From IMG/VR virus record IMGVR_UViG_3300023174_000038, positions 1 to 64,000 of that record: a stretch of 64,000 nt of DNA. One strand, given 5' to 3'. Made by a program: the position numbers and the translations under genes. The notes below the pieces were generated by a model that saw only the letters and a list, made by a program, of their open reading frames with translations, searched no databases and was not told the origin of the DNA. Shown here piece by piece: positions 27,986 to 48,720 of this stretch. Each line of letters opens with the position of its first letter. Positions within the stretch are counted from its first letter, which is position 1.

Positions 27986-28891
27986 TTAAAAGCTATGAGA
28001 TAAACCAATACCAACTTGTTTAACATCATTTGTTTTACCACCAGCATCAACATTGCGATAAGCAACTAATACATTGGTACGCTTACTGAAAGCATAATTA
28101 ACACCTACGTTATATGCTTTAACTTCTCCTGCGGCTAAACCAGTTTTAGTAGCATAGCTACCTTTAACACTAACTTCATTAGTTACCGGAGCTGTTACAC
28201 CATAAAAATGACCTTTAGTTTTAACTAGACCTGCTTTATCATCACTTTGAATTGTAGACAATTCAAAACCAGCTAGTTTTCCACTAGCAGTTACTACATT
28301 GGTATAATCTGTACCAGATTCAAAACGTGCAACTGCGGCTGCAACAGGACCTAATTTTCCACCAATACTCCATGATGTTGCTTCTAACGTAGCAGGTGCT
28401 GTGTACATACTACGGTCATACGTAGCAAATACAGGACCAAAATTTGCGGCTAAGTAAGCACCATCACCAATACGCTTGTCACGTACATTAACTACATCAA
28501 CCGAAACGGATGAATAAAGCGCACCGCCAAATGGATCAGCGTTCTTCATAGTAATGTATTCACTGTGTTCTTTACGACCTAAATCAATACTACCAAATTT
28601 ATTAGAAAGACCAATTGTACTTTGACGATCACCTAATTGTGTTGTAGCCCCAGCTTTTGGATCATCGGCTACTACAGAAGTTTCAACAACTACTCTAGCT
28701 GTTAATCCATGTCCTAATTTTTCTTCAGCTTTGATGCCAAAACGACTTGAATCATTAACAAGAGAGTTAATTTTTACAGTACCTGTTTTAGTGCTATCAG
28801 CAAATTCACTGATTTTACCATATACTGATACTTGTGCTGTTGCAACCATTGTTGTTGCAGCCAATAATGTCGCTAATGCGATTTTTTTCAT
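27986..28891 (-). CDS. Gram-negative general porin (beta-proteobacterial type)
   Basis: Signal peptide, AQVSVYG, SRFGIKAEEKLGHGL, RQSTIGL..FGSIDLGR, YAFSKRT, C-terminal GIGLSHSF. Confidence 0.9.
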   Translation of the reverse strand: MKKIALATLLAATTMVATAQVSVYGKISEFADSTKTGTVKINSLVNDSSRFGIKAEEKLGHGLTARVVVETSVVADDPKAGATTQLGDRQSTIGLSNKFGSIDLGRKEHSEYITMKNADPFGGALYSSVSVDVVNVRDKRIGDGAYLAANFGPVFATYDRSMYTAPATLEATSWSIGGKLGPVAAAVARFESGTDYTNVVTASGKLAGFELSTIQSDDKAGLVKTKGHFYGVTAPVTNEVSVKGSYATKTGLAAGEVKAYNVGVNYAFSKRTNVLVAYRNVDAGGKTNDVKQVGIGLSHSF

Positions 28892-28975
28892 AAAATTTCC
28901 TTTTAAAAATAAACCTGATTAATCAGGCTAGACTAATATTTATAGTAATTTTTTCTACCCATATAAAATAGTTGT

Positions 28976-29668
28976 TTACGTAATAACGTCTGCTTTAACA
29001 TGAAAAATAGCTCTTTTTACCAAACTATCTATACTATTAACTAAGGGAATGCCGTTTTTTTCTACTTCTCTAACGGCTAATGGTAATTCTGTACAACCTA
29101 ATACTACTGCACTTGCTCCACGACTAATCAAACTGTCTACTACAGGCATTAACATATTATGTGATACAACCATATCCCCTGCCTTAATTAAATCTATAGC
29201 AGGTTGTACTATGTTGTTCATTTCTTCTTGACTGGGGACAATACAATCCCAATCAATTAAACGATTTTGATATAAGCCTAATTCAATTGTAGCTTGTGTT
29301 CCCATTATACCTATTGTACCCGTAACATTTATATCACGTAATACATCAGCTACACTATCTACAATATGTAAAATAGGAACTTTAAATTTAACTAATTCAT
29401 CATACCAGTAATGCGCTGTATTACAAGGGATAACAATCGTAGTACATCCAACTGCTTTCAATACTTGCATACCTTGTAGTAAATATGGTAGTGGTCTATC
29501 ATCACCATTACGTATACTTGTGCTACGATCAGGTACACGTGGCTCATTCCATAATACAAATGGAATATGTTCTTGGTCACAAGTTGCGGGGGTTTGTTGT
29601 ATAAGTCGTGTTATATATTCCGCACTTGCTGCCGGACCCATACCGCCTAGTATACCTAGACGTTTCAT
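28976..29668 (-). CDS. Aspartate/glutamate racemase family protein
   Basis: LGILGGMGP, catalytic cysteine pair IPCNTAH and LGCTELP. Confidence 0.92.
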   Translation of the reverse strand: MKRLGILGGMGPAASAEYITRLIQQTPATCDQEHIPFVLWNEPRVPDRSTSIRNGDDRPLPYLLQGMQVLKAVGCTTIVIPCNTAHYWYDELVKFKVPILHIVDSVADVLRDINVTGTIGIMGTQATIELGLYQNRLIDWDCIVPSQEEMNNIVQPAIDLIKAGDMVVSHNMLMPVVDSLISRGASAVVLGCTELPLAVREVEKNGIPLVNSIDSLVKRAIFHVKADVIT

Positions 29669-30270
29669 TTTTTGTTAAACAATAAACTAGATGCAATAAC
29701 CATAGCAGTTTGTGCGGCTTCTACATCTGTGGGTTGTTCTTTCCAACCTACACTAATCTGCCCAATGAAGACTCCGGGCTCTGCTGGTACACTGATACGA
29801 CACATATAGTTTACTCCGTATTCTTTATATACAAATCCAATAAGACTTTGTGGCTTTGTATATGGGCTACAGGGAATCTTACCTGACATCAATCCAATAA
29901 CATCGTTATTATTGTCATAGTTTTTACTAAACAACCCAACTTCTAATCCGTCATTTCTTTTATCTCTACCACCATTGCGTGTAGCTAAGTAAACAACTTT
30001 TCGTGTGTTAAGCAATGTATTGACTTCAAGAAAGGCAACCATTTCTACTTCAGTATTTTTTAATAAGAAATTATATGCGTCATCATACTTACCGTTCATC
30101 TTTGGTAATGCCTGTTGAGCACGGTAACTTGCTAAGAAGGCATCTTTTTCTGTATAAACTATCCAACCACCAAATCCTAGTACACAGAGAAACACAACGG
30201 TGAATAGGCGAAATGGACTTTCGCCTATATAGGTTAATAAACTAAAGAGAAAATCTTTAAGTTTGTCCAC
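29665..30270 (-). CDS. Single-TM membrane protein with a C-terminal GAF-like domain; resembles the T4 holin T architecture
   Basis: N-terminal amphipathic segment, TM at about aa 20-39, two Cys, C-terminal strand-strand-helix pattern; CDS is solid, function is inference. Confidence 0.55.
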   Translation of the reverse strand: MDKLKDFLFSLLTYIGESPFRLFTVVFLCVLGFGGWIVYTEKDAFLASYRAQQALPKMNGKYDDAYNFLLKNTEVEMVAFLEVNTLLNTRKVVYLATRNGGRDKRNDGLEVGLFSKNYDNNNDVIGLMSGKIPCSPYTKPQSLIGFVYKEYGVNYMCRISVPAEPGVFIGQISVGWKEQPTDVEAAQTAMVIASSLLFNKK

Positions 30271-31534
30271 CAGTAGCTACCTCTTTGTCGCAGACAAATG
30301 CTGTTACTGCAACATTGCCGTGTACGTGACTTGCTGTACGAATCATATCCATTAATGGATCAACGGCAATTAACAATACTAACACAGCTTCACTTGGTAG
30401 TTTTAATAAGTCACACACAACTGCTACTGTAGCAACTGTAAGAATACCTGTTGTACCTGCACTTGCTAATCCTGCCAAAATACTACCAAATAACACAACT
30501 GCTAGTCCCGTTAAGCCTAATGGAGCATCATAGATATTAGCAATGAATACTGTAGCAATAGCATAGTAAACAATACTACCAATACGATTGACTGTAAAAC
30601 TTAGTGGAACTGTTAGTTCAACACCACCTTTATCAAAGTGTAGTCTGTGTAATGATTCTTGTGCGTATGGAATACAAGCTAAACTACTACGTGAACTAAT
30701 AGCAACAATCAATGTTTCTTTAGTTTCACGGATAACAGTCATTAGACTTAATCCACTACGATACCAGATCATAGCAGTACCTGCGGCTACAACTAATAGT
30801 CCACCAACAAACTGTTGGAATACAAAGTCAAACATTGTTAAGAATATACCTACCCCTACCTTACCAACTTGGGCAGCAATCATTGCTAATAGAGCGATTG
30901 GTAAAAAGTAATTTAAGAATTTAAAGATACTGATACTTGCTTGTTGAATGCTTTTAAGTACTTCAACTAGCATCTTTTGACCTTCTGTTTTAAGATGTCC
31001 AAGAGCAACACCAAATATTAAACAGAAGATAACAATCTTCAAACTTTCACCATTGTTTAACGTGTTGAAAATGTTTTCTGGAATAAACTTCTCTGCCATC
31101 TTACCTGCACTTACTGCCGGTGCTACTGGCATTGGTTCTTTAAGAGTAATGTTTAAATCAGTACCACTGTCTTTGTTATTAACCAATACACCAAGTTGTG
31201 TTTTCTTTTCAGGAGTCATTTCAGTTCCTGTGACTAAAACTGTACCTACGCCAATTATTGCGGCTAAGAACATGCTACCAACAAAGCCTACAATGATTTT
31301 GCGTATTAATTGTTGGCTGCCTTCTTTTTGTAGTAAGCCAATGATACCAACTAGTATAGTTGCTAACAAGAATGGTAGTACAACAACTTTAAGTAAACTT
31401 ATATAGATACTACCAATACTATCAAAGTTAATGCTGAACTCGGGTGCGTAAACACCACTCAATATACCCACGATAATAGAACCAAGTATGGTCCACGGGC
31501 TTGTTAAAAACGTTTTTAAATGTGCGGTTGTCAT
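30257..31534 (-). CDS. Dicarboxylate/amino acid:cation symporter (DAACS, GltP-like)
   Basis: Multi-TM; LLK.VVLP, FIPENIF, SSRSS motif, DMIRTA in TM8. Confidence 0.9.
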   Translation of the reverse strand: MTTAHLKTFLTSPWTILGSIIVGILSGVYAPEFSINFDSIGSIYISLLKVVVLPFLLATILVGIIGLLQKEGSQQLIRKIIVGFVGSMFLAAIIGVGTVLVTGTEMTPEKKTQLGVLVNNKDSGTDLNITLKEPMPVAPAVSAGKMAEKFIPENIFNTLNNGESLKIVIFCLIFGVALGHLKTEGQKMLVEVLKSIQQASISIFKFLNYFLPIALLAMIAAQVGKVGVGIFLTMFDFVFQQFVGGLLVVAAGTAMIWYRSGLSLMTVIRETKETLIVAISSRSSLACIPYAQESLHRLHFDKGGVELTVPLSFTVNRIGSIVYYAIATVFIANIYDAPLGLTGLAVVLFGSILAGLASAGTTGILTVATVAVVCDLLKLPSEAVLVLLIAVDPLMDMIRTASHVHGNVAVTAFVCDKEVATGGQT

Positions 31535-31543
31535 ACTGAGTCC

Positions 31544-32361
31544 TTATTTCTTTTCAGCTTTGTAGCGATCCATTAACTTTTTAGTGTCAATATTACTGTA
31601 TTCATTTTTAATAACGTAATTAATAATGCTTAACAGTTGTAGTGATTTAGGATTTACTGCTACAGCAATATTATCTACGCTATCACTTATTGTAATTGTC
31701 TTAGTACTAATTGCGGCGTCTGGTTTCTCAAAAGCAATTTTCTTAATTTCAAACTCATCACGGTACGCAGCCGCAATATCACCCCTTGTAACTTTATCAA
31801 TGATTACATCCCATTTATCTTCTGGTAGAAATACAGCATTAGGGAAATTGATACGGGCAAATGTGTCATAGCTTGAGTTACGAATAAAACTTATTTTACC
31901 GTTAAAATCTCTAATTACTTGATATGTTTCTTTGCCTTGACTATTTTGACTTAGCCATAAACGATTAACAACTAAACTTTGTCTTAGCTTAATATAAGGA
32001 TCACTGAACCTAACAACCTGTAATCTAGGGCCGGTTACTGACAATTTGCTAACAGCAATATCGGCACGTCCGTCTCGTACTTGTTCAACAACTTCAGCAA
32101 AACTTTCTGCATCTCGTCTAAATTGTACTGGAACTCCGAGTAATACTCCAATTCTTCGTGCAATTTCAACGTCAAGACCATGGATATCATCCTCACCGCC
32201 ACTGAAGAAGGGAGGGTTATCTTTTTTGGTCATAGCCACAATAAGAACGTTTGCTTTCTTAATTGCGGCTATATCAGGGGGTAGTGGTACCGTAGAAGTT
32301 GGTAATTGTGCGTGGACAACTGAACTAATCAGTACAAATAATAATAGTAGTAGTTTTTTCA
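31544..32361 (-). CDS. Periplasmic amino-acid binding protein (family 3 SBP)
   Basis: Signal peptide MKKLLLL, NPPFF, GLDVEIA, GRADIAVS.LSVT..R, RFSDPY; start near 32361 (track start 32380). Confidence 0.85.
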
Positions 32362-32404
32362 TAGTGTTGTATTTATGCAAGGTTATATGTCAATTGTTTT
32401 ACTA

Positions 32405-32430
32405 ATAAAAAAGAGCCCCACAGAGCCCTT
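32405..32430 (-). terminator. Intrinsic terminator
   Basis: GC-rich hairpin AAGGGCTCTGTGGGGCTCTT followed by a T tract. Confidence 0.65.
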
Positions 32431-32512
32431 AGTACTGGTTACGCAAATCCAGCGACACGCTATTTTGTGTCCGATTTAAATATAGCTAAAAACCAGCGTT
32501 TAACGCCAGTAA

Positions 32513-33160
32513 TTACTTTCCCAATAAGCTGTCAACCTTAGCCTCAGCAACATCTAAACGTGCTTCAATAGCGTCCAATATTGGATCTGCTGGAGTAGAA
32601 ACTGCTTCAACAATTTGTTGTGTTACTTCAGGAGAAACTTCTTCAACACCTGTAGCTGTAGCAATTACTTCAGCAACTGCGGCTGCTACTTCTTGTGCTA
32701 CTTCTGGGGCCGGAGTTGGCATATCAGCAACTGCTTGCATAATAGCTTCTGTAATTGCTACTGGATCAACTACAACTTCTGGCTCTGCTGTTACAACTGC
32801 CATAACTGCGGCTGCAACGATTTCAGCAACTTCCTCATGAGCAACGGCTGCTGCTTCAGTTTGTGCTATAACAACGTCAGCAACAATGTCAGCGGCTTCT
32901 GCATGGTCAGCACTTGGTGATAGTGCAACTACTTCTTCAACTTCTATCGGTGCATCTGCGGCTGGGGCAGAAATAATAGCATCAATATGTTCTTGAGTTT
33001 GAACAGCAATCAAGTGGTCAACTTGTACTTCAACTACGGATAATCTTGCGTCTAGTTCTTCAATGCTTATGGCACTGTCTGTGTTAACTGTTGTTCCAGT
33101 TAGGTTGGCTAATTTGGCTTCTACAGCTACTAATCTTGCGGCTAAATCTTCAAATCTCAT
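32513..33160 (-). CDS. Acidic Ala/Val/Glu-rich protein with three ARLxxxE coiled-coil motifs; likely -1 frameshift extension to 32460
   Basis: SD AAGGAG; ends G GGA AAG TAA followed by a hairpin. Confidence 0.75.
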   Translation of the reverse strand: MRFEDLAARLVAVEAKLANLTGTTVNTDSAISIEELDARLSVVEVQVDHLIAVQTQEHIDAIISAPAADAPIEVEEVVALSPSADHAEAADIVADVVIAQTEAAAVAHEEVAEIVAAAVMAVVTAEPEVVVDPVAITEAIMQAVADMPTPAPEVAQEVAAAVAEVIATATGVEEVSPEVTQQIVEAVSTPADPILDAIEARLDVAEAKVDSLLGK

Positions 33161-33206
33161 GAGTTTCTCCTTGTGGGGTTAATTGTGTGCCACCATGGCA
33201 CATAAT

Positions 33207-33241
33207 TATTTAACAAGTATTGTGTGACAATGATGTGACAA
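33207..33241 (-). promoter_or_regulatory. Pho-box-like direct repeat plus TAAATA
   Basis: TTGTCAC-ATCA-TTGTCAC, 11 nt, TAAATA. Confidence 0.7.
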
Positions 33242-34872: not shown

Positions 34873-34907
34873 TATTTATTGAGAGATATGTGACAAATTA
34901 GTGACAA
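34873..34907 (-). promoter_or_regulatory. Pho-box-like direct repeat plus TAAATA
   Basis: TTGTCAC-TAAT-TTGTCAC, 11 nt, TAAATA, 4 nt, ATG. Confidence 0.72.
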
Positions 34908-35541: not shown

Positions 35542-37209
35542 TTATTTATATTGTAGATTCACCAAATCTTGGTGTAGTTTATCGCTAGACAATTGACGCA
35601 AAACTCTTGCGTTGTCTACATTTACTTGATTTTTGTAAATCTCTTTTGGTGCATAGAACGGTGCATCTGCTAATGCAAATGAATATGCTTGATAGCCTGC
35701 AGGTTGTGTTGCCATTCTTGCTATATCAACACCGCCGGCTAATTCATTTGGCTGAACATTTCTATTCACTGTTTCTGTCTTTTGTTCTTGTGTATTTGTA
35801 TTTTGTACAATTGGTCTTTCTTCAATTGCATCATTCAATACTGAACGTGAACCCATTTTAATACCTTCATTCTGAGGTACTTCTATTTCAGGAGTAGTAG
35901 CATTACGACCCTGCGGTGATTGTAAACTATACATTTCAGTTGATCCAAATGAAACATTATTACTCATTGTATTATTAGGATCAGAAAATATAGTTTGAGT
36001 TGGTGAACGTAGTCCTCCAAGATTGATTACACTAGTCTGTGTAGTATTTACAATAGCAACAATAGATGATTGTGAGGATGTATTTATTTGTGTAGTTGAT
36101 GATCCAGTAGTTGTCATACTGCTAGTAACACTTTGTGCAGTTAGTGAACCAGCAACTGATTCTGCTTGTTCTCGTGCTTGCTGTGCATCTTTTGCGGCGG
36201 CTGACTCTGCTGCCTGAACAACTGCCTTAGCTTCATTGCCTATTCTAGTTTGGTTACTACTAATCATACTTAATACATTACCTAGACTAGGACCGGCTTT
36301 ACTATCATCTTTAGCAGATTTATTTTCACTAGGACGAGGCTGAGATCCTGCAGGAGGAGGATTTCCTGGCGGGGGAAGGGGCCCTGCTTGTTGAGAACCA
36401 TTAGGTGGGGGAGGACTACCTGGGGGAGGAGGTGGAGGTGCGCCATCTTCTGGTGGAGGTGGGGGAGGTGCATCCGCTACTGCTACTGGAGTAGGTGCTA
36501 ATTTAGCAAGAGCATCTGAGTAACCTCTACAACTAGGTGAGTATAATGGGTTAGTAGCACAAGGGTCAACACTATACTTCAAACTAAAATTTACATTAAT
36601 AATTTCAGGACCATATGGTCCAACCCAGTAGTTGTTGTCTCTTCCCACAAATCCATACTGAGCATTACCTAAATCAGGAGTAGCATATGCTGACTTAAAT
36701 GTTTCTGACCAATAGAACTGAGTCCAACCATATCTACGATTTACATCATAGTTGTATGCTTCTACTACCTTTGTGTTTGTGTTGTTGTATATGTTTACAT
36801 AAGCCTTTAGATAATCTTGTCTGCCATCATCCCATCCATTACCGTTCTTAGCAGTAAAGCCAAAGTTAAAACCATTCACTTGTAATCCTGTGCCACTATT
36901 AGGTAGCGCATTTTTAATAGCAACAGTTTGATTTAAGTCTGTTAGTCCATATGAAAAATTAATGACATTAGACCCTGCGCCCCAGGCGGCAACTCTGGGC
37001 AATGGACCACAATAACCAGGGCCGCCCGGCTCCCAACATGTAAGCTGTTGACCAATAGTACCGGCATTTTGCCATGTACTTGTAGTAGCTGTGGCATTAC
37101 TGGTAAAATTGACCAAATTACCAGTTGTTGTTACATCCTGACTATTAGAATATCTTATTGACAATAAGACCAAGAACAGCCCCAATGCCAATTTTCTTAT
37201 AAGTGTCAT
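35542..37209 (-). CDS. Secreted/surface protein with a beta-rich N-domain, Pro-rich linker and low-complexity stalk
   Basis: Signal peptide; DPCATNPLYSPSC; PPPPPP runs. Confidence 0.75.
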   Translation of the reverse strand: MTLIRKLALGLFLVLLSIRYSNSQDVTTTGNLVNFTSNATATTSTWQNAGTIGQQLTCWEPGGPGYCGPLPRVAAWGAGSNVINFSYGLTDLNQTVAIKNALPNSGTGLQVNGFNFGFTAKNGNGWDDGRQDYLKAYVNIYNNTNTKVVEAYNYDVNRRYGWTQFYWSETFKSAYATPDLGNAQYGFVGRDNNYWVGPYGPEIINVNFSLKYSVDPCATNPLYSPSCRGYSDALAKLAPTPVAVADAPPPPPPEDGAPPPPPPGSPPPPNGSQQAGPLPPPGNPPPAGSQPRPSENKSAKDDSKAGPSLGNVLSMISSNQTRIGNEAKAVVQAAESAAAKDAQQAREQAESVAGSLTAQSVTSSMTTTGSSTTQINTSSQSSIVAIVNTTQTSVINLGGLRSPTQTIFSDPNNTMSNNVSFGSTEMYSLQSPQGRNATTPEIEVPQNEGIKMGSRSVLNDAIEERPIVQNTNTQEQKTETVNRNVQPNELAGGVDIARMATQPAGYQAYSFALADAPFYAPKEIYKNQVNVDNARVLRQLSSDKLHQDLVNLQYK

Positions 37210-38287
37210 CTATCTTTTCCTCATCCATTTTTGGAATCTTGTCTGGATTAGCTTCCCACTGTGCTTTAGCTTGCTCACCAATCTTACCTTCATATGGACA
37301 AGGTGTGCCGGCTGCTAACATAGCATCAAATACACGACGGTCTTGACACATAGTAGCAACAGCGGCTACTTTCATACCCATATCATATAGTGTCTTAGAT
37401 AACTTTAATCGTTCACAATTCATATCACGTATTGTTCCACCTGAACTTACACCAAACACTTGTGTTTGTACACTACCTGAACTTCCTGTTGAACAAAGGT
37501 CAGCATTACCACCTGATAACATAGAAGGAGCTACAGCAGTAGGTGGAGGTTGAATCACACGTTGGGTAATTTCAGTCTGATTAATATTCTTGTTAGTTAA
37601 TTCACCTTGTTGAATATTTGTATTAACTGAATTGTTTTGATTTATATTATTATTAGTGGAAGTACTAGTACTAGTTGATGTGTTAATATTACGGTTAGTC
37701 ATATCACCCGTATTAACATTGTTATTAGTAGCTGTACTTGTACTAACATTGTTATTGTTATTAGTAGCCGTACTTGCACTAACATTGTTGTTATTGTATG
37801 TCATCGTACCAGTATTTTCGTTCTTATTAATATTGGTATTATTACTTGTACTCGTACTAACATTGTTATTGTTATAAGTCATAGTACCAGTATTGACATT
37901 GTTATTATTATATGTCATTGTACCAGTATTTTCATTTTTATTAATATTTGTAACAGTTCCACTCTGAATATTATTGTTTGTGTTTACACTAGTGCTAGAA
38001 CTATTGTTATTATTAGTATTTGTACTAGTACTATTAACAGCACTGGTACTATTGCTATTGCTGTTACTGACTGTATTACTGTTTGAAGTAACCGTACTAG
38101 TGCTATTACTTGTACTGTTTGTATCAACTAAACTTTTGGAATCATACCCGCCTTGATTGATTAATGTACTTGTACCTGTGGTTGTACCACCGCTGGAACT
38201 TGATGTGGTAGTAGTTTGTGCTTGTGTAGTGAATGCCATACCCAGCAAGGCAACTATAGCGAGAATCTTTTTCATTTTTATTATCAT
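37145..38287 (-). CDS. Secreted Asn/Thr/Ser-repeat protein with a Cys-containing C-terminal domain
   Basis: Signal peptide (MKKILAIV...AQA); NTGTMTYNNNNV repeats; PPPTAVAP...C..CERLKLSK..MCQD..PCP. Confidence 0.75.
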   Translation of the reverse strand: MIIKMKKILAIVALLGMAFTTQAQTTTTSSSSGGTTTGTSTLINQGGYDSKSLVDTNSTSNSTSTVTSNSNTVSNSNSNSTSAVNSTSTNTNNNNSSSTSVNTNNNIQSGTVTNINKNENTGTMTYNNNNVNTGTMTYNNNNVSTSTSNNTNINKNENTGTMTYNNNNVSASTATNNNNNVSTSTATNNNVNTGDMTNRNINTSTSTSTSTNNNINQNNSVNTNIQQGELTNKNINQTEITQRVIQPPPTAVAPSMLSGGNADLCSTGSSGSVQTQVFGVSSGGTIRDMNCERLKLSKTLYDMGMKVAAVATMCQDRRVFDAMLAAGTPCPYEGKIGEQAKAQWEANPDKIPKMDEEKIDDTYKKIGIGAVLGLIVNKIF

Positions 38288-38347
38288 CCTCTAGAGATAG
38301 TATTTATTTGCTTATTAGTTGAGAAATATCACACTTTATTAAATAGG

Positions 38348-38367
38348 AAAGGCTCCTAAGAGCCTTT
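38348..38367 (-). terminator. Terminator hairpin ending the tmRNA coding piece
   Basis: AAAGGCTC-TTAG-GAGCCTTT, identical to 27946-27965. Confidence 0.7.
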
Positions 38368-38681
38368 ACTGAGTTTCTGTTACGAGGTATGTCTTACCCT
38401 AGGCTGCGTTTAGGCTGCCAATGCGAACTGTGAGTCGTTTGCGTTTACTTTTTTTGCTTCTACGGCCGAGTTCCCCCAACCCTAACGGCTTCTGCTTTGC
38501 CGAGCGCCTAATCTTAACTACTATCCTGTCGGTCGATCCCAAGTCACCCCCATCATAAAAACACAATACCAAAGTAAATTTACACGGAATACCAAAGTAA
38601 ATTTATGCTCTTATGGTGGAGGTGGGGAGAATTGAACTCCCGTGTCGCCAGTGTTTCCTAAGCAGGTTTACGCTGTTCTTA
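38368..38681 (-). ncRNA. ssrA: Two-piece (circularly permuted) tmRNA: acceptor piece about 38681-38614, intervening segment 38613-38552, coding piece from 38551; tag ANDSQFALAA at 38442-38410
   Basis: T-arm GGGAG-TTCAATT-CTCCC and CACCTCC-ACCA end; 5' GGGGGTG pairs with CACCTCC including the G3-U alanine wobble; tag frame GCA AAC GAC TCA CAG TTC GCA TTG GCA GCC TAA. Confidence 0.92.
38565..38605. repeat. 18-bp direct repeat (AATACCAAAGTAAATTTA x2, 23-nt period) in the tmRNA intervening segment
   Basis: 38565-38582 identical to 38588-38605. Confidence 0.9.
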
Positions 38682-39314
38682 CTATTTAGTCAACCTACCC
38701 CTAGATAGATTGAATAAAGTAATTTTATCATCATCTGGTTTTAAATAAAAGTTAATTTGGGAATTATTATACCAATGTTTACCGTATGCATTACTATTCT
38801 TATTCTTTCTGTTGTCTCTCCATTCCGATGTAGGTATCCATCCGGATGGAATTTCATTTTTGTAGTACATTTTACGATTAACTAATTCAACTGACGATTT
38901 TTCTACACACCAAACTTTTCCAAAATTAGAGTTATTTTCTTTTTGTTGGTGCTTTCTTTCTTTAAAAGTTTTATTTCTCTTTTCCATTGCAGATTGGGTT
39001 TTTGACAACTTACTTGCTCGGGCTTGTTGTTCTTGATTTATCGCAAAATTAGTTTTAGTTTGAACATTTTTAAATGGATTAGGATGTAATTGTCTGCATT
39101 TTTTACCAGCTTCACTTTGTCTAATTTTTACTAATTCTTCTTTAGGACTTAATTTTGCTAAACCCTGCCATGCAACATAATCTTGCCAACGACCATATTC
39201 TTCGTATAACTTGCGATGTGCCTCTGCATGTTCATCAATAGATAATTCTATAAGGTTCCTAGGATCATCTGTCCCGCCTGCGTGTTTAGGAATAATATGG
39301 TGTTTATGGCTCAT
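38682..39314 (-). mobile_element. Free-standing HNH homing endonuclease
   Basis: HHIIPKHAGGTDDPRNLIEL...EHAEAH; two NS(N)xxGKxW repeats; own ATAAATA 5 nt before ATG 39314. Confidence 0.85.
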
Positions 39315-43542: not shown

Positions 43543-45096
43543 TTATTTGTTATAATTATTTAATATATCAGATAGCCATGGTATATAATTTTCTAATTTA
43601 TGACCTCTAATGTCATCTAACCTACGGGTATCGTCAGCTAGCTTTGGTAACAGATGGCTATTATCTTTAGCAAACATATAGTTGATTAAACCACTATAGC
43701 TATGCCTAAATATATTACCCATTTCTAGTCCATATTTTTCATCTATTTCTTTGTAAAAAAATTCATATGCTTCTCGTATTTGATTTTTTACATTAACGGG
43801 TAGTACTTGTATACTCATGGGAGACGGGCCCTCTAGTACGTGATAGCTAGGCGTTTTTCTAATTCTTTTATAATTTTTTTCTATTAACCATTTAGAAATT
43901 TCTAAAAAATGATATACATTGAATATACTTATAGTAGTAGATATTGTACCATAAATAGATTTAGTTGGATTATTACCTAACACATCTAAATTTTGTTCTA
44001 GTGCATCCCAAGTACTTGGATATCTTAGATAGTATGCCAAATCCTCAATTGCATCTATACTGCATCCTATTCCTACGGATCTGAACTCTTCCCATAAGTT
44101 ATATAGCTTATTTGGTATAGCAAACATATTTGAATTGTAATCCAAATGAACACGATTGCTATGACCCATATCTATAATTTTTTGTAATAATTTAAAATGT
44201 ATTTTATTAATTGTAGGTTCGCCGCCGGTAAAATAATATCGGTCAATATAGGGAATTAGTTTTTCAATTTGATTCCAGAATTCATCCGATTCATACCATT
44301 CAAAATCCGAAGAATCAATGGTATAATTATTATTTTTTTTGATTACATTATACGTTTTTCCCCCATAAAAAGACATAGGAGCTGAGGAAGGCTTTTCTCC
44401 CTCGTATGACATGAAAACAAAATCGTCATACCACAGACTGCTATCGGTCGGGCCGCAATATCTACATTTTAAATTGCATAAATTTCCAAAACGAATATCA
44501 ATATATTTTATTGGAAACTTTTCTATATCTATACTTCCATCATTAGCAGTGTTATCAATGAATCCTGTATGTCCGTATGTATTAATACTGTGTAATCTTT
44601 TACTAGATAAACCGGTGTCTTCTTCTTTCCAACATAAATTACATGACGGATGTTTTTCTCCGCGCAACATACTTGCACGTAATTCTTTAAATACTGTGTT
44701 ATTTCGTGATTGATTTATATCAGTATTTTTAACGTTTAACATTTCTCCGTTCTCTATTAGTTTACCGTACGGGTAGTATATCTGTTGACAACAAATTCTT
44801 AAATCTCCATTTTGTTGTATGCCAGTAGAGACCCATGGTATTGGGCAAAACGTTGAATTTTTTGGAAGGTCCTGCATTTGAGGATTTATTTGATTCAGTC
44901 TTGTTTTTGCTAGCTCAATTGAAGCTTCTGAGCAATGAGGATTTTTCATACCTGCTACTATAACTTCTGATTCAACATCATGTGTTATCATAGCTGTTAT
45001 TAATTCAGGAAAATCTGTAATTGTAATAAGTTCAACTCGTTCATTAGAATCAAAACAGTTGTGAAGTTTATTAAACCAATATTCACTGGTATTCAT
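43543..45096 (-). CDS. Radical SAM protein with an N-terminal Twitch/SPASM-like domain
   Basis: FCPIPW..GDLRICC..SCNLCW; CNLKCRYC; FTGGEP. Confidence 0.88.
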   Translation of the reverse strand: MNTSEYWFNKLHNCFDSNERVELITITDFPELITAMITHDVESEVIVAGMKNPHCSEASIELAKTRLNQINPQMQDLPKNSTFCPIPWVSTGIQQNGDLRICCQQIYYPYGKLIENGEMLNVKNTDINQSRNNTVFKELRASMLRGEKHPSCNLCWKEEDTGLSSKRLHSINTYGHTGFIDNTANDGSIDIEKFPIKYIDIRFGNLCNLKCRYCGPTDSSLWYDDFVFMSYEGEKPSSAPMSFYGGKTYNVIKKNNNYTIDSSDFEWYESDEFWNQIEKLIPYIDRYYFTGGEPTINKIHFKLLQKIIDMGHSNRVHLDYNSNMFAIPNKLYNLWEEFRSVGIGCSIDAIEDLAYYLRYPSTWDALEQNLDVLGNNPTKSIYGTISTTISIFNVYHFLEISKWLIEKNYKRIRKTPSYHVLEGPSPMSIQVLPVNVKNQIREAYEFFYKEIDEKYGLEMGNIFRHSYSGLINYMFAKDNSHLLPKLADDTRRLDDIRGHKLENYIPWLSDILNNYNK

Positions 45097-46403
45097 AGCC
45101 GTTCTCCTGTATGATGTTGTAACTCAGGAAAGGTTTTTTTGAAATCAGTATTTCTTTCTTTATCTAGTTTAATCAAATAACCCATATACCAGTTAACATC
45201 AAAGTCAACAGTTTCTTCTAATGCATTTTTAATTATACTTAACCTGTTATCAAATACATTTTTACAATCTTCCTGTAATTTTTGTGAAGATTTTAATGGT
45301 AATAATGTATTGTAATACCATTGCTCATACTCGGAAATTTTAATACGTAAATGTTCTTTCCATTCTTTACTAGCGGACCTTATTGAAAAGTACTCAGGAT
45401 ATAGTAAAACAATATTATGATAATCAGATTCCCAAATACTAGTGTTGTAAAACGTATGCGGGAAGAGGTCATTTACTAAAAAATATTCTAGTATATCTTT
45501 TATCCGATGTATATTCATCAGACTCCAGGTTGGAGTAATTACCCAATGACGATTACTTCCTGTTAAATTATCTTTTAATAGTTTAATATTTTTCAATATT
45601 TTATTTGCATCAGCTGGATAGCGTATGTAAAATAATCTATCCACATCAACTTCATCTAAACTTACTAATACACGTAATTTTTCCATGTGTTTCCAGTAAT
45701 CTAAAACGTCTGTTGATTTATAAGTCATTGTGGTTAAGTTAGTACTGTACACAAATTCTATTTCTCCTAATCTGTTTGATTCTTTAATATATTCTAGTAT
45801 TTCATAATGTTCAGGATGAAGTAAAGGTTCTCCACCAGCAAAATATATTTCTTCAACATTGTTTACTTGCGATTTTATAGTTTCAATGAAGCTTTCTTTA
45901 TGATTTTTACTGTTATTAAATTGATCCTCAGTATAATTAGGATCAATTGCCTTCATAATAGGTACCCATGAACTACTATACGTAGGATGGCACACTGTAC
46001 ATGCTAGATTACATAAATTGTTAAATCTGAAATCCCATTTCAAAAATTTCATACTACTCATTGTTCCATCTATAGCAGTATTATCTTCAATCAGTTCTTC
46101 ATAAAAATCTTTAAACCTATCATTAAAGCTTCGGCGTATTGTTGACGTACTTCCCCATTCTTCTTCTTTGTAGCATCTTGTACAATGTTTTGATTTTGTA
46201 TCGTTTAATATATCTCGTCTTAATTCTTTATAATTTTCATTGTTCCAAATATCTTGTATATTTTCTTTATACAAATTCCCCATACTGCCACCTAAACTGA
46301 TACAGCAGGGAAGTATATCTCCTGTTGGAACATTATGTATATGCATAAACGGAGCCATGCAAAATACTTTGCTTTCTTTAATGTGAAATGTTTTTTTAGT
46401 CAT
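45093..46403 (-). CDS. Radical SAM protein with an N-terminal Twitch/SPASM-like domain
   Basis: FCMAPF..GDILPCC..HCTRCY; CNLACTVC; FAGGEP; start MTKKTF at 46403 (track 46523). Confidence 0.88.
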   Translation of the reverse strand: MTKKTFHIKESKVFCMAPFMHIHNVPTGDILPCCISLGGSMGNLYKENIQDIWNNENYKELRRDILNDTKSKHCTRCYKEEEWGSTSTIRRSFNDRFKDFYEELIEDNTAIDGTMSSMKFLKWDFRFNNLCNLACTVCHPTYSSSWVPIMKAIDPNYTEDQFNNSKNHKESFIETIKSQVNNVEEIYFAGGEPLLHPEHYEILEYIKESNRLGEIEFVYSTNLTTMTYKSTDVLDYWKHMEKLRVLVSLDEVDVDRLFYIRYPADANKILKNIKLLKDNLTGSNRHWVITPTWSLMNIHRIKDILEYFLVNDLFPHTFYNTSIWESDYHNIVLLYPEYFSIRSASKEWKEHLRIKISEYEQWYYNTLLPLKSSQKLQEDCKNVFDNRLSIIKNALEETVDFDVNWYMGYLIKLDKERNTDFKKTFPELQHHTGERL

Positions 46404-48720
46404 TTGAAATTTTAAAAACTTTTTTTGATTTATTTCTATACTGTTCGTGTACCGTTTCTTTTGTTTGAATTTCAGATGATATCCAATCTTTAATATTACC
46501 TGTTTCTTCAAAAACACCATCAAAACTATAATTAACCTTTTCTCTTTCCAATCGGTATGTTTCTTTTAAGTGCGGAGTTACTGTATCATGTACAAATTTA
46601 TGTGTCAACTTTATATTATAGTTGCCATTAGAGTCTATCTCAAACGTTAGATCAGAGTCGTACATTCTAGAAATATAATCACCAAACGTATTAAAGTCAG
46701 TTTCTGCATTGCACTTAAATGTAAATTTAAAAGCTCCAAAGTACGTGTGTATAACATATAGCAAAGCAAAATATTCGTTAGTTATACTAGCAAAAAACGT
46801 GTTATCTGTGTTTCTATTCAAGTTAACATATTGGTCATATGTTATATAGTCTGTTACATTTTTAGTACCAGTAAAAGTATAAAAATCTTGTATATTGTGA
46901 TATCGTTGAGCATTAATCATAGCAGAATCAGAATAATAATTGATTATATCTAACCACACATGGTTTAATTTTATTCTTAAAAATCTATGCATAGCAGTAT
47001 TATTATCAGTATGCCATGAGTTAAATAAATTGTTATCGTAGGGTTTCTCAATCCAATTCATTCCATAATCTTTCCAATTAGTATCCCAGTGTGCAATACT
47101 TTGGGGCGGTGATGCTCCAAAGCCTGGACTTATATTATCAATCCAATTTCTACAATTGAATAGTAATTGAAAACTATGTAAGCAGTCGATTGGTTCTTCT
47201 GTGGGGAATCCTACCATCCAATTTATGTGAACAAACATCCCCGACGCTTTAGAATCTTTAAGATTATTTTCTACTTCCCATATGTCAATCTTCTTACGCA
47301 TATCATTAAGAACTTTTTGACTTCCTGATTCTACCCCATAGCTCAGACATGTGCATCCACTATCTGTAACCTTTTGTAAGAATTCAGCAGTCATTCTTCC
47401 ATCACATCTTGCGTAAGAGTTCCAATGTATTTTAATATTTCTTTCTAATATTAGATCAACCAGTTTTTGGAAATTTTTTAAATTTCCATTAACTAAACTA
47501 TCAACAAACCAAAATCTACTAACACCTAAATTATTTTGTTGGTATTCTATTTCATCTACTACTCTTTCCGGAGTCATTGATCTAAATTTCCAGAAATGTG
47601 TTTCAGCGCAAAAACTACAGTCTGCTACACACCCTCTAGACGTTTCAATGCTAACCCCGTAGCTGTGTTCGTAGTTGCTAAAATTGTAATCAGAATAGTC
47701 CGGATACGGGTATACGTCTAAATCTAATTTACTATTTACCGTCCCTATAGTTTGACTGCTACCAATATCGGTATCATCAGTTAACTCTTCCAAAAATTTT
47801 ACAAAATTTTCTTCAGCCTCTCCTATAAATTTGTAATTTATAAGAGTTGTTAATAAATGTCCGTTGCTAATAGCACCGGGACCTCCTACCACGATACATA
47901 CATCGGGCATCATATATCTTAATTCCCGTATTAGATATAGACTAGCATGGATGTTTGTATCATATAAACTAAATCCAACGACCTTGGGATTAGATTGAAG
48001 AATATTAAATAATGTTCTATCAAATACGTCCTTCAAGTCGGGCAATATAAATTCACTAAAACTTTCCGAGCTATTCCAATAAAAATATCTATTTGATGCC
48101 CAGTAGTCAATTCCGGTGGTATCATGAAGATGATGGAAAGATTCTATATTAAGATCGTACACTCTAACACTATAATCTAAATGTCTCAATAATCCTGTTA
48201 GTTTGGCGAGGTTGTAAGGTGGAAATAGTTTTCCCCAAGCTGGCGCTACTACAAGTCCAATTCTAAATTTAGAAGTGTCTGCCCATTCAACTTCTTTATG
48301 GATATATCCGGAATCTACGGTAGGTTGTTCATCTCCTAAATGTGATATTGCATGACTTAGATTTGAATCTTTTTTAAGTATATGATTTAGGATAATTTGA
48401 TCCCGATCACCGACAACCATCTTTGTTGCCTCTTCCTCTTGTTTTGCAATATCATCCGACATTAGTGTTATTCTTTGTCGTCTGTCTCTTTCACTCCAAA
48501 ATCTAGGATTATCAATTTCGGGAAATCTTAATATTGCAATTTCAATAAATGCTTTATCAATTTTAGAACTAACCGCGGCAGCCTCTACGACAGACGCCAT
48601 TGTGTCCCATTTGATCATATTTTCTAATATATAAGTTGGGCATCCTCGTGTGGATGCAACATTAATTCTTTCTAAATGATCCGCATCTTTTAGTCTTTCT
48701 TCAAAGTTTATTTTTTTCAT
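46396..48720 (-). CDS. B12-binding (class B-like) radical SAM protein
   Basis: PPYNLAKL, VVGFS, VVGGP, GEAE (cobalamin domain); ETSRGCVADCSFC; YGVESGS; MVGFPTE. Confidence 0.88.
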   Translation of the reverse strand: MKKINFEERLKDADHLERINVASTRGCPTYILENMIKWDTMASVVEAAAVSSKIDKAFIEIAILRFPEIDNPRFWSERDRRQRITLMSDDIAKQEEEATKMVVGDRDQIILNHILKKDSNLSHAISHLGDEQPTVDSGYIHKEVEWADTSKFRIGLVVAPAWGKLFPPYNLAKLTGLLRHLDYSVRVYDLNIESFHHLHDTTGIDYWASNRYFYWNSSESFSEFILPDLKDVFDRTLFNILQSNPKVVGFSLYDTNIHASLYLIRELRYMMPDVCIVVGGPGAISNGHLLTTLINYKFIGEAEENFVKFLEELTDDTDIGSSQTIGTVNSKLDLDVYPYPDYSDYNFSNYEHSYGVSIETSRGCVADCSFCAETHFWKFRSMTPERVVDEIEYQQNNLGVSRFWFVDSLVNGNLKNFQKLVDLILERNIKIHWNSYARCDGRMTAEFLQKVTDSGCTCLSYGVESGSQKVLNDMRKKIDIWEVENNLKDSKASGMFVHINWMVGFPTEEPIDCLHSFQLLFNCRNWIDNISPGFGASPPQSIAHWDTNWKDYGMNWIEKPYDNNLFNSWHTDNNTAMHRFLRIKLNHVWLDIINYYSDSAMINAQRYHNIQDFYTFTGTKNVTDYITYDQYVNLNRNTDNTFFASITNEYFALLYVIHTYFGAFKFTFKCNAETDFNTFGDYISRMYDSDLTFEIDSNGNYNIKLTHKFVHDTVTPHLKETYRLEREKVNYSFDGVFEETGNIKDWISSEIQTKETVHEQYRNKSKKVFKISND

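What the first reader, a model, noticed from the sequence alone, without database searches (positions are those of the whole stretch)
32460..32522. Likely programmed -1 frameshift adding an amphipathic membrane tail
The ORF ends TTG GGA AAG TAA. This contains the G GGA AAG heptamer (32522-32516) used in the lambda G/GT frameshift, in the correct phase. A hairpin ACTGGCGT-TAA-ACGCTGGT follows after 5 nt. The -1 frame continues as GK-VITGVKRWFLAIFKSDTK-stop (32460), a basic amphipathic helix. The result would be soluble and membrane-tethered forms of an acidic coiled-coil scaffold in a fixed ratio, outside the usual tail-chaperone context.
Basis: partly seen in the sequence, partly recalled or inferred. 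Interest (0 to 1): 0.7.

Follow-up and report, generated by a model that had tools for sequence, protein, structure and literature searches.

The report
Frameshift adds amphipathic tail, jumbo phage
An abundant acidic protein of uncultured freshwater jumbo phages very probably comes in two forms, because some ribosomes slip back one base at its last two codons and add a short, positively charged amphipathic helix of the kind that anchors proteins to membranes.

Summary
The 215-aa gene (32513..33160, minus strand) ends TTG GGA AAG TAA, with G GGA AAG in phase. An 8-bp hairpin starts 5 nt later. The -1 frame runs 18 more codons.

One sequence alone proves little: an 18-codon stop-free run has about a 0.27 chance at 36% GC. 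The case rests on 72 distinct homologous 3' ends from phage and lake metagenome contigs:
- 62 keep G GGR AAN, against the genome's codon bias.
- 60 of those 62 keep the -1 frame open for 13-19 codons.
- None has a start codon in that frame.
- The -1 peptide keeps a strict amphipathic pattern: 99% hydrophobic at seven positions, 6% at the others, net charge +1 to +5. Nucleotide identity there is only 56%.
- A hairpin 5-9 nt downstream persists with many different stem sequences and is far more stable than the peptide alone requires.
- Heptamer and -1 frame are lost together in several lineages.
- A relative only 47% identical keeps all three parts.

This is most likely a real -1 programmed frameshift in a new gene family, outside any tail or capsid context. 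Membrane tethering by the tail and the role of the parent protein are inferred. No expression data exist. A conserved pseudoknotted RNA follows in the 3' UTR.

The parts
33202..33230 (-). Sigma-70-like promoter match: TTGTCA, 17 nt, AATTAT. It overlaps a TGTCAC doublet.
   Evidence: 9 of 12 matches, consensus only; the TGTCAC-N-TGTCAC doublet occurs only twice in the genome, here and upstream of the neighbouring phosphoesterase gene.
33166..33172 (-). Strong Shine-Dalgarno sequence AAGGAGA, 5 nt before the ATG
   Evidence: Read directly
32513..33160 (-). 0-frame gene: 215-aa acidic, Ala/Val/Glu-rich, all-helical protein of unknown family. The stop TAA lies at 32513-32515.
   Evidence: No Pfam, PHROG, NCBIfam or PDB match.
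32536..32539 (-). SD-like AAGG, 13 nt upstream of the heptamer. A weak lead for an upstream stimulator.
   Evidence: raw association with an intact cassette, p = 3e-5; not supported once relatedness is controlled.
32516..32522 (-). Slippery heptamer G GGA AAG, in phase, covering the last two sense codons
32492..32510 (-). Hairpin of 8 bp with a 3-nt loop, 5 nt after the heptamer. Likely frameshift stimulator.
32460..32516 (-). -1 frame extension: 18 codons (VITGVKRWFLAIFKSDTK), then TAG at 32460-32462. No start codon of its own.
32435..32471 (-). Conserved 3'-UTR RNA element: two hairpins joined by a pseudoknot pairing. The -1 frame's TAG lies in the first loop.
   Evidence: Single copy in the genome. 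No Rfam family.
32405..32430 (-). Terminator-like hairpin plus T-run. Probable 3' end of the transcript.
   Evidence: The position is conserved in the A2 alignment.

Best explanation
This is a genuine -1 programmed ribosomal frameshift cassette at the very end of a phage gene.

Mechanism (inferred). Most ribosomes decode Gly-Lys and terminate at TAA, giving the 215-aa acidic helical protein. A fraction pause because the hairpin 5 nt downstream sits at the mRNA entrance. The tRNAs for Gly (GGA) and Lys (AAG) then re-pair one base back, on GGG and AAA. Translation continues in the -1 frame for 18 codons.

Product (inferred). The longer isoform carries about 14 residues of basic amphipathic helix, with the pattern V-I-x-x-hydrophobic-K/R/Q-x-W/F-hydrophobic-x-x-L/I-F-K. 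This most likely acts as a weak in-plane membrane-binding helix, like the C-terminal targeting helices of MinD and FtsA. A set proportion of the protein would then be held at the cytoplasmic membrane.

What is shown here: nucleotide-level selection on the heptamer, selection on RNA structure in the hairpin, peptide-level selection on the -1 frame, the absence of any start codon in that frame, and the joint loss of the parts.

What is inferred: that slippage occurs and at what rate, which tRNA slips in the G GGG AAG variants, and what the tail does.
For: 1. Slip site.
- 93 homologous loci give 72 distinct 3' ends. Of these, 62 carry G GGR AAN: GGGAAAG 27, GGGGAAG 25, GGGAAAC 5, GGGAAAA 4, GGGGAAA 1.
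- This runs against genome codon usage. Leu codons ending in G are 18% genome-wide but 62/72 here. Gly GGR is 29% genome-wide but 68/72 here. Lys AAG is 26% genome-wide but 59/72 here. The neighbouring Leu codon ends in G in only 8/72.

2. The -1 frame.
- It is open for 13-19 codons in 60 of the 62. The +1 frame is open that far in only 5/62.
- No ATG, GTG or TTG occurs in that frame upstream in any of the 72. In most, the frame closes 2-3 codons upstream of the heptamer.

3. Coding signature in the -1 frame.
- Entropy by codon position is 0.98 / 0.69 / 1.23.
- pN/pS is 0.64, against 1.03 and 1.30 in the other two frames.
- At 56% nucleotide identity, the BLOSUM62 score per site is 2.03, against 0.74 and 0.20.
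- Seven positions are 99% hydrophobic and the other six are 6% hydrophobic.
- The hydrophobic moment is 0.63, z = 2.4 against own shuffles. Net charge is +1 to +5.

4. Hairpin.
- It is present in about 50 of 53 sequences, 5-9 nt after the heptamer, with unrelated stem sequences. Mean z is -2.5.
- It is much more stable than synonymous recodings that keep the same peptide: mean z -3.2, and 44/53 fall below -1.64.

5. Evolution.
- The cassette is ancestral on the gene tree. There are 3-7 independent losses of the heptamer, and the -1 frame is lost along with it, never the reverse.
- A relative only 47% identical still has G GGA AAA, a hairpin of -12.9 kcal/mol and the -1 peptide ITSGFRKLFRSLF.
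- The cassette also travels with the C-terminal module on a protein with a different N-terminal part.

6. Background.
- G_GGA_AAG is reported as highly shift-prone in E. coli (PMC5009743).
- The phage encodes tRNA-Lys(UUU) and tRNA-Gly(UCC) and no tRNA-Lys(CUU).
Against: - There is no experimental or expression evidence. No RNA run could be listed and no cultured phage carries the gene.
- 26 of the 62 sites are G GGG AAR. These are not canonical X XXY YYZ sites, because Lys-tRNA would need a G-U pair at the first codon position after the shift. Alternatively only the Gly-tRNA slips on the G_GGG tetranucleotide.
- Several lineages have lost the cassette, so the long form is dispensable for them.
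- pN/pS of 0.64 is only a moderate constraint.
- In the window the hairpin is followed by TTTTT and also fits a terminator pattern.
- The supported independent losses are too few for a significant sign test.
- Membrane binding rests on composition and analogy only.
Confidence: 0.75

Rival explanations
1. The frameshift is real, but the tail is not a membrane anchor. The basic amphipathic helix might instead dock onto the protein's own acidic body or onto a partner protein, switching assembly state. It might also act as a degradation or sorting tag.
For: The parent protein is very acidic and the tail is basic, so electrostatic self-interaction or partner interaction is plausible. No membrane data exist. 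The Atkins review notes that C-terminal 'dangling tails' can be degradation signals.
Against: The pattern has 7 hydrophobic positions in i, i+3/4 spacing, with Trp/Phe favoured and Lys/Arg flanking. This is typical of in-plane membrane helices. The gene is usually linked to genes for membrane-associated envelope chemistry: an LpxH-like phosphoesterase in 61/95 loci and a GT2 glycosyltransferase in 47/95.
Confidence: 0.25
2. There is no recoding. The heptamer simply reflects a conserved Leu-Gly-Lys C-terminus. The hairpin is a terminator or an mRNA-stabilising 3' structure. The open -1 frame is an untranslated by-product of RNA-level conservation.
For: The hairpin plus TTTTT scores as terminator-like in the window. 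An 18-codon open frame has a 0.27 chance. The last 4 codons of the -1 frame do overlap a conserved RNA element and vary together with its stem.
Against: - Synonymous choices at Leu, Gly and Lys are biased towards G GGR AAG against genome usage.
- A T-run after the hairpin is not conserved, and a stronger conserved terminator lies about 60 nt further on.
- RNA constraints do not produce period-3 conservation with an invariant middle T, nor a BLOSUM score of 2.03 in one frame only.
- The peptide pattern is kept across at least five unrelated stem sequences and two hairpin registers.
- Lineages without the 3'-UTR element still keep the 13-15-codon core.
Confidence: 0.08
3. The short ORF is translated on its own as a 15-20-aa peptide. 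This would occur by re-initiation after termination or from a non-canonical start (the conserved ATH codon), with GGGR acting as a weak Shine-Dalgarno sequence. There would be no frameshift fusion.
For: A G-rich run lies about 6 nt before the conserved ATH codon. Stop and putative start are adjacent, as in coupled genes.
Against: - No ATG, GTG or TTG is available in 72/72 sequences.
- The candidate codon is ATA 32, ATT 16, ATC 11 and ATG only 3. This is the opposite of what selection for initiation would give, and fits selection for Ile.
- GGGA and GGGG pair poorly with the anti-SD sequence.
- The AAC variants keep GGA upstream (5/5), as tandem slippage requires.
Confidence: 0.07

Closest known systems
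Phage lambda G/GT tail assembly chaperone frameshift (and its relatives in tailed phages)
   Same: It has the same heptamer, G GGA AAG, and a -1 shift that produces two proteins sharing an N-terminus (heptamer shiftiness: PMC5009743).
   Different: - This is not a tail locus and has no homology to chaperones.
- The shift happens on the last two codons, directly before the stop.
- The extension is 13-19 aa, not a whole domain.
- A downstream hairpin is conserved here. That lambda needs no such structure is from memory.
Phage T7 gene 10A/10B, and the Lactobacillus phage A2 major head protein
   Same: A -1 shift near the end of a highly expressed phage gene gives a minor, C-terminally extended isoform (cited in PMC5009743, and in PMC10885494).
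   Different: Those are capsid proteins whose extensions decorate the virion. Here the parent is an acidic all-helical protein with no capsid signature, in a non-structural region, and its tail is an amphipathic basic helix.
E. coli dnaX (tau/gamma) and B. subtilis cdd
   Same: These are bacterial -1 shifts on an A_AAG-type site with a downstream stem-loop. In dnaX the new frame ends almost at once. In cdd the shift gives a short C-terminal extension.
   Different: dnaX shortens the product, whereas here it is lengthened. The cdd extension is described as incidental, whereas here the extension is under peptide-level selection. An upstream SD-like stimulator as in dnaX is only weakly suggested.
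C-terminal membrane-targeting amphipathic helices of MinD and FtsA
   Same: These are short C-terminal basic amphipathic helices. The MinD helix binds membrane weakly and only at a valency of two or more (PMC6803595). That would make the share of tailed subunits a natural dial for membrane avidity.
   Different: In MinD and FtsA the helix is encoded in frame and is always present. Here it would be added only to the frameshifted fraction. Membrane binding is untested and there is no sequence homology.
Arterivirus nsp2TF
   Same: Frameshifting swaps the C-terminus for one with a different membrane-association region, and the product goes to a different compartment (PMC5009743).
   Different: That case is a eukaryotic RNA virus with a -2 shift stimulated by proteins in trans, and the new region is a transmembrane segment rather than an in-plane helix.

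Membership tests
-1 programmed ribosomal frameshift cassette | Slippery site in the correct phase (X XXY YYZ or a near variant) | tested here: met
   The window has G GGA AAG in phase. Of 62 homologs with the cassette, 36 are canonical (GGGAAAG, GGGAAAA, GGGAAAC) and 26 are G GGG AAR. Codon choice runs against genome bias.
-1 programmed ribosomal frameshift cassette | Stimulatory RNA structure 5-9 nt downstream | tested here: met
   The window has a 5-nt spacer and a hairpin of -9.9 kcal/mol. About 50 of 53 homologs have a hairpin with a spacer mostly of 3-9 nt. It is more stable than synonymous recodings, z = -3.2.
-1 programmed ribosomal frameshift cassette | A -1 frame ORF without its own start, under purifying selection as protein | tested here: met
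-1 programmed ribosomal frameshift cassette | Trans-frame protein actually made, at a measurable efficiency | not testable with these tools
   No RNA runs were listed, there are no proteomic data, and no cultured phage carries the gene.
Lambda-type tail assembly chaperone (G/GT) | Gene pair between the tail tube and tape measure genes, with homology to chaperone families | tested here: not met
   There is no PHROG or Pfam hit. The neighbours are a GT2 glycosyltransferase, an LpxH-like phosphoesterase and a solute-binding protein.
Lambda-type tail assembly chaperone (G/GT) | The -1 frame encodes a whole extra domain | tested here: not met
   The extension is 13-19 codons.
Capsid-protein frameshift (T7 10A/10B type) | The parent gene is the major capsid protein | tested here: not met
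   The Phage_capsid family (PF05065) has no match anywhere in the genome. The model is all-helical and acidic. No fold match was found.
MinD/FtsA-type membrane-targeting sequence (function by analogy, not homology) | Short C-terminal amphipathic helix with basic residues | tested here: met
   Hydrophobic moment 0.63, z = 2.4, net charge +1 to +5. Seven hydrophobic positions at 99%.
MinD/FtsA-type membrane-targeting sequence (function by analogy, not homology) | Binds the lipid bilayer | not testable with these tools
   Needs localisation or liposome assays.
Intrinsic terminator (alternative reading of the first hairpin) | GC-rich stem directly followed by a U-run, conserved among homologs | tested here: not met
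   The window fits the pattern. In many homologs the stem is not directly followed by a T-run. A separate conserved terminator lies downstream.

The most novel reading that the evidence does not exclude
The frameshift may act as a dial for membrane avidity. The acidic helical protein would self-assemble, and the share of subunits carrying the weak membrane helix would decide whether assemblies sit on the inner membrane. There they might organise the neighbouring lipid A and glycan-modifying enzymes during jumbo-phage infection. The conserved pseudoknotted RNA that begins where the -1 frame ends might tune the ratio, or mRNA fate, in response to a signal. That would be a regulated, recoding-based protein-localisation switch in a phage.
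Probability: 0.1. Interest if true: 0.8.

Novelty: new member of a known kind. Interest (0 to 1): 0.62.

Why it matters
Nearly all annotated phage frameshifts are in tail assembly chaperone genes. In SEA-PHAGES genomes the count is 2397 of 2476 (PMC10885494). This case differs in four ways:
- It is a well-conserved cassette in a new, very abundant gene family: more than 500 proteins with E <= 0.001, with the related contigs coming almost entirely from freshwater-lake metagenomes.
- The phages are uncultured PA5oct-like jumbo phages.
- The shift sits on the last two codons before the stop.
- The only product difference is a 14-18-residue amphipathic basic helix.

If confirmed, it would show that phages use recoding to make soluble and membrane-directed versions of one protein. 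It would also give gene callers a concrete example of a missed C-terminal extension. Finally, it offers a natural series of slip-site variants (G GGA AAG, G GGG AAG, G GGA AAC) and hairpin variants for studying bacterial frameshifting.

Tried and rejected
- **Family and fold of the parent protein.** Nothing significant came from Pfam, PHROGs, NCBIfam, PDB sequences, Foldseek against PDB, BFVD or AFDB clusters, or the ESM Atlas. The only named Atlas lead was a GPO-type scaffold cluster at score 0.69, which is within chance range.
- **In-frame fusions.** I looked for homologs with the tail fused in frame, which would have been strong evidence. The longer database proteins (224-229 aa) are N-terminal start miscalls. 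No distant representative has an in-frame amphipathic tail.
- **Transcripts.** No RNA run was listed, so transcript ends and transcriptional slippage could not be examined. Slippage is unlikely on runs of 3-4 identical bases (established knowledge).
- **Upstream SD-like stimulator.** The raw association looked strong but disappears when relatedness is controlled.
- **Dimer prediction.** The result was 'no answer' and counts as no evidence either way.
- **Cultured relatives.** None carries the gene.
- **Rfam for the 3' UTR.** Only chance-level hits.
- **Literature search for GGGGAAG as a slip site.** Nothing relevant.
- **First representative search.** The job was lost on the remote machine and was rerun.

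Full report
**What is in the sequence.**
The minus-strand ORF 32513..33160 encodes a 215-aa protein and ends TTG GGA AAG TAA.
- The heptamer G GGA AAG (32522-32516) is in the X XXY YYZ phase.
- Five nucleotides after it comes an 8-bp stem (two G-U pairs) with a 3-nt loop, at 32510-32492. Its energy is -9.9 kcal/mol, z = -2.45.
- The -1 frame reads Gly-Lys and then VITGVKRWFLAIFKSDTK, with TAG at 32462-32460.

On its own it is weak. At 36% GC, 18 stop-free codons have a chance of about 0.27. The hairpin is followed by TTTTT and also fits a terminator pattern. Even so, this is the only in-frame GGGAAAG in 243 long ORFs of the genome.

**Where it lies.**
The window is the first 64 kb of a 348,701-bp virus record that CheckV rates as complete.
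- It has a large terminase subunit. This is about 48-50% identical to those of jumbo phages such as Pseudomonas phage PA5oct and Sinorhizobium phage Phosso.
- It carries 25 tRNA genes and a tmRNA gene.
- The gene has a strong Shine-Dalgarno sequence.
- Its neighbours are non-structural genes linked to the cell envelope. Upstream lie a GT2 glycosyltransferase and a distantly LpxH-like phosphoesterase. Downstream lie a solute-binding protein, a dicarboxylate symporter, a racemase and a porin.
- The phosphoesterase (61/95 loci) and the GT2 gene (47/95) are the usual neighbours. The downstream genes vary.

The protein is acidic (41 D+E, 7 K+R) and is predicted to be all-helical, with mean pLDDT 80. 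It matches no family or fold.

**Comparative test.**
Scans of viral and metagenome contigs gave 95 related loci, nearly all from freshwater-lake samples. A protein search found more than 500 relatives. The C-terminus ...AEAKVD-x-LLG-K/N is essentially invariant. The 93 usable loci give 72 distinct 3' ends.

1. *Slip site.*
   - 62 of 72 carry G GGR AAN: GGGAAAG 27, GGGGAAG 25, GGGAAAC 5, GGGAAAA 4, GGGGAAA 1.
   - This runs against genome usage. Leu codons ending in G are 18% genome-wide and 62/72 here. Gly GGR is 29% and 68/72. Lys AAG is 26% and 59/72.
   - The adjacent Leu codon, which is not part of the heptamer, ends in G in only 8/72.
2. *Frame.*
   - In 60 of those 62 the -1 frame stays open for 13-19 codons. 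The +1 frame does so in only 5/62.
   - No ATG, GTG or TTG exists in the -1 frame upstream in any of the 72. In most, that frame closes 2-3 codons before the heptamer. The frame can therefore only be entered by frameshifting.
3. *Peptide.*
   - Positions 1, 2, 5, 8, 9, 12 and 13 are hydrophobic in 99% of 48 distinct peptides. The other six positions are hydrophobic in 6%.
   - Positions 6 and 14 are basic.
   - The mean hydrophobic moment is 0.63, z = 2.4 against shuffles of each peptide. Net charge is +1 to +5.
   - Entropy by codon position is 0.98 / 0.69 / 1.23.
   - pN/pS is 0.64, against 1.03 and 1.30 in the other frames.
   - At only 56% nucleotide identity, the BLOSUM62 score per site is 2.03, against 0.74 and 0.20.
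   - The second codon of the extension is ATA, ATT or ATC in 59 of 62 and ATG in 3. That is selection for Ile, not for a start codon.
4. *Hairpin.*
   - About 50 of 53 sequences have a hairpin starting mostly 3-9 nt after the heptamer. At least five unrelated stem sequences occur, in two registers relative to the peptide.
   - The hairpin is much more stable than sequences that encode the same peptide with resampled synonymous codons: mean -9.7 against -3.5 kcal/mol, z = -3.2, and 44/53 fall below -1.64. RNA structure is therefore selected in addition to the peptide.
5. *Joint loss.*
   - On a tree built without the last codons, the cassette is ancestral.
   - The heptamer was lost 3-7 times. 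The -1 frame goes with it in every informative comparison and never the other way. The supported pairs are too few for a significant test.
   - Of the 10 ends with TTA-Leu, 8 have the -1 frame closed after at most 5 codons.
6. *Depth.*
   - A relative only 47% identical has TTG GGA AAA TAA, a hairpin of -12.9 kcal/mol and the -1 peptide ITSGFRKLFRSLF.
   - A protein with an unrelated N-terminal part but the same C-terminal module also carries the cassette.
   - Three other distant relatives lack it.

**How it most likely works.**
The hairpin at the mRNA entrance would slow the ribosome while Gly-tRNA and Lys-tRNA occupy GGA and AAG. Both re-pair one base back, on GGG and AAA. Val-Ile... then follow. 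Unshifted ribosomes meet TAA at once.
- G_GGA_AAG is described as highly shift-prone in E. coli. The A_AAG effect is tied to bacteria that have a single tRNA-Lys(UUU) (PMC5009743).
- The phage itself supplies tRNA-Lys(UUU) and tRNA-Gly(UCC), and no tRNA-Lys(CUU).
- All five AAC variants keep GGA before the AAC codon. This is what tandem slippage needs, since tRNA-Asn is reported to shift only in tandem.
- The 26 G GGG AAR sites are not canonical. One possibility is that only the Gly-tRNA slips on the G_GGG tetranucleotide, giving Gly-Glu-Val. The other is that Lys-tRNA re-pairs with a G-U at the first codon position. A comparable G-U 'mimic' is discussed for annotated phage frameshifts in PMC10885494.

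All of this mechanism is inference. The efficiency is unknown.

**What the tail does.**
The conserved core is about 14 residues. Lineages that lack the downstream RNA element end the frame right after ...L-F-K. In the others, the last four residues vary together with an RNA stem.

The core resembles the C-terminal membrane-targeting helices of MinD and FtsA. The MinD helix binds membrane only weakly and needs two or more copies (PMC6803595). I therefore favour a model in which the frameshifted fraction tethers the protein, or assemblies of it, to the cytoplasmic membrane. The envelope-related neighbourhood fits this model. It is not tested. The main alternatives are a tail that binds the acidic body or a partner protein, or one that acts as a degradation tag. 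A dimer prediction gave no answer.

**Rivals for the recoding itself.**
- *Hairpin as terminator, frame as by-product.* This is contradicted by the period-3 signal, the frame-specific amino-acid conservation, the codon bias at the heptamer, the lack of a conserved U-run and the separate conserved terminator.
- *Independent translation of the short ORF.* This is contradicted by the lack of any start codon and the depletion of ATG at the only candidate position.
- *Stop-codon read-through or a +1 shift.* This is contradicted by pN/pS near or above 1 in those frames and by early stops in most +1 frames (5/62 open for 13 or more codons, against 33/62 in the 0 frame past the stop).
- *Assembly error.* This is excluded because about 90 independent contigs agree.

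**Comparison with known systems.**
The signal (heptamer plus hairpin) is the textbook -1 frameshift cassette, and the heptamer is the one used by lambda G/GT. It is not a tail-chaperone frameshift, because the location, homology and extension length all fail. It is not a capsid frameshift of the T7 10A/10B or phage A2 type either. In outcome it is nearest to cases where recoding changes the membrane association of a viral protein, such as arterivirus nsp2TF. I know of no phage or bacterial case in which a frameshift adds a short amphipathic helix. Literature searches here found none, but those searches are limited. I therefore file it as a new member of a known kind, with an unusual product.

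**Also present.**
Directly after the -1 frame lies a conserved RNA element (32471-32435), found in 55/72 ends.
- It has two hairpins with conserved loops, plus a covarying pair that links the first loop to the second loop. The pair types are AU 20, CG 18, GU 4, GC 2 and UG 1.
- This amounts to an H-type pseudoknot, followed by the terminator.
- 92.9% of cells are paired, and the covariation score is 0.277 against 0.084 in shuffles and at most 0.135 when the pairs are slid.
- It is single-copy in the genome and has no Rfam family.
- It persists in lineages that lost the frameshift cassette, and the cassette persists without it. The two are therefore separable modules.
- Its function is unknown.

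Noticed in passing
window 32435-32471 (-), with the terminator at 32405-32430: A conserved structured RNA lies in the 3' UTR. It has two hairpins with conserved loops (AAGATAG-like and CGTAA-like) and a covarying loop-to-loop pair that makes an H-type pseudoknot. It occurs in 55 of 72 homologous 3' ends, is single-copy in the genome and has no Rfam family. It is independent of the frameshift cassette. Its function is unknown.
   Followed up: partly
window 38319-38707 (-): The phage encodes its own tmRNA gene (tag peptide ANDSQFALAA), about 5 kb upstream of the gene studied.
   Followed up: no
window 27986-32380 (-): A run of host-like envelope and transport genes sits in a jumbo phage: a porin-like outer-membrane protein, an Asp/Glu racemase, a dicarboxylate/amino-acid:cation symporter and a family-3 solute-binding protein. 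This is an unusual auxiliary gene set. It is present next to the gene in only 11 of 95 related loci.
   Followed up: partly
window 33186-33240 (-) and about 34880-34906 (-): The doublet TGTCAC-N-TGTCAC occurs only twice in the 348.7-kb genome. One copy lies upstream of the studied gene, overlapping its -35 match. The other lies upstream of the LpxH-like phosphoesterase gene. It may be a shared operator. A perfect 7-bp palindrome (33186-33202) follows the -10 match of the studied gene.
   Followed up: partly
G000:C1:193529-202935 (outside the window): A cluster of 25 tRNA genes. It includes Lys(UUU), Gly(UCC), Asn(GUU), Leu(UAA) and Leu(UAG), which are the tRNAs that read the slip-site codons.
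   Followed up: partly
L004 compared with L024 (3' ends): The coding sequences are nearly identical (tree branches of 0.001 and 0.004). Yet the cassettes differ: G GGG AAG with an 18-codon tail, against G GGA AAC with TGA and a 14-codon tail, and the hairpins differ too. The 3' cassette seems to be exchanged by recombination as a module.
   Followed up: no
protein P0134: A 247-aa database protein joins an EF-Ts-like N-terminal segment to the C-terminal 150 residues of this family. It could be a real fusion or a chimeric assembly.
   Followed up: no
window 35542-38287 (-): Two large low-complexity secreted proteins lie upstream. One has long proline-rich tracts (555 aa). The other consists of Asn/Thr/Ser repeats (380 aa).
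   Followed up: no
window 43543-49973 (-): Three ORFs (43543-45096, 45093-46523 and 48720-49973) match radical-SAM PHROG families, the first only weakly. The 774-aa ORF lying between the second and third has no such match.
   Followed up: no
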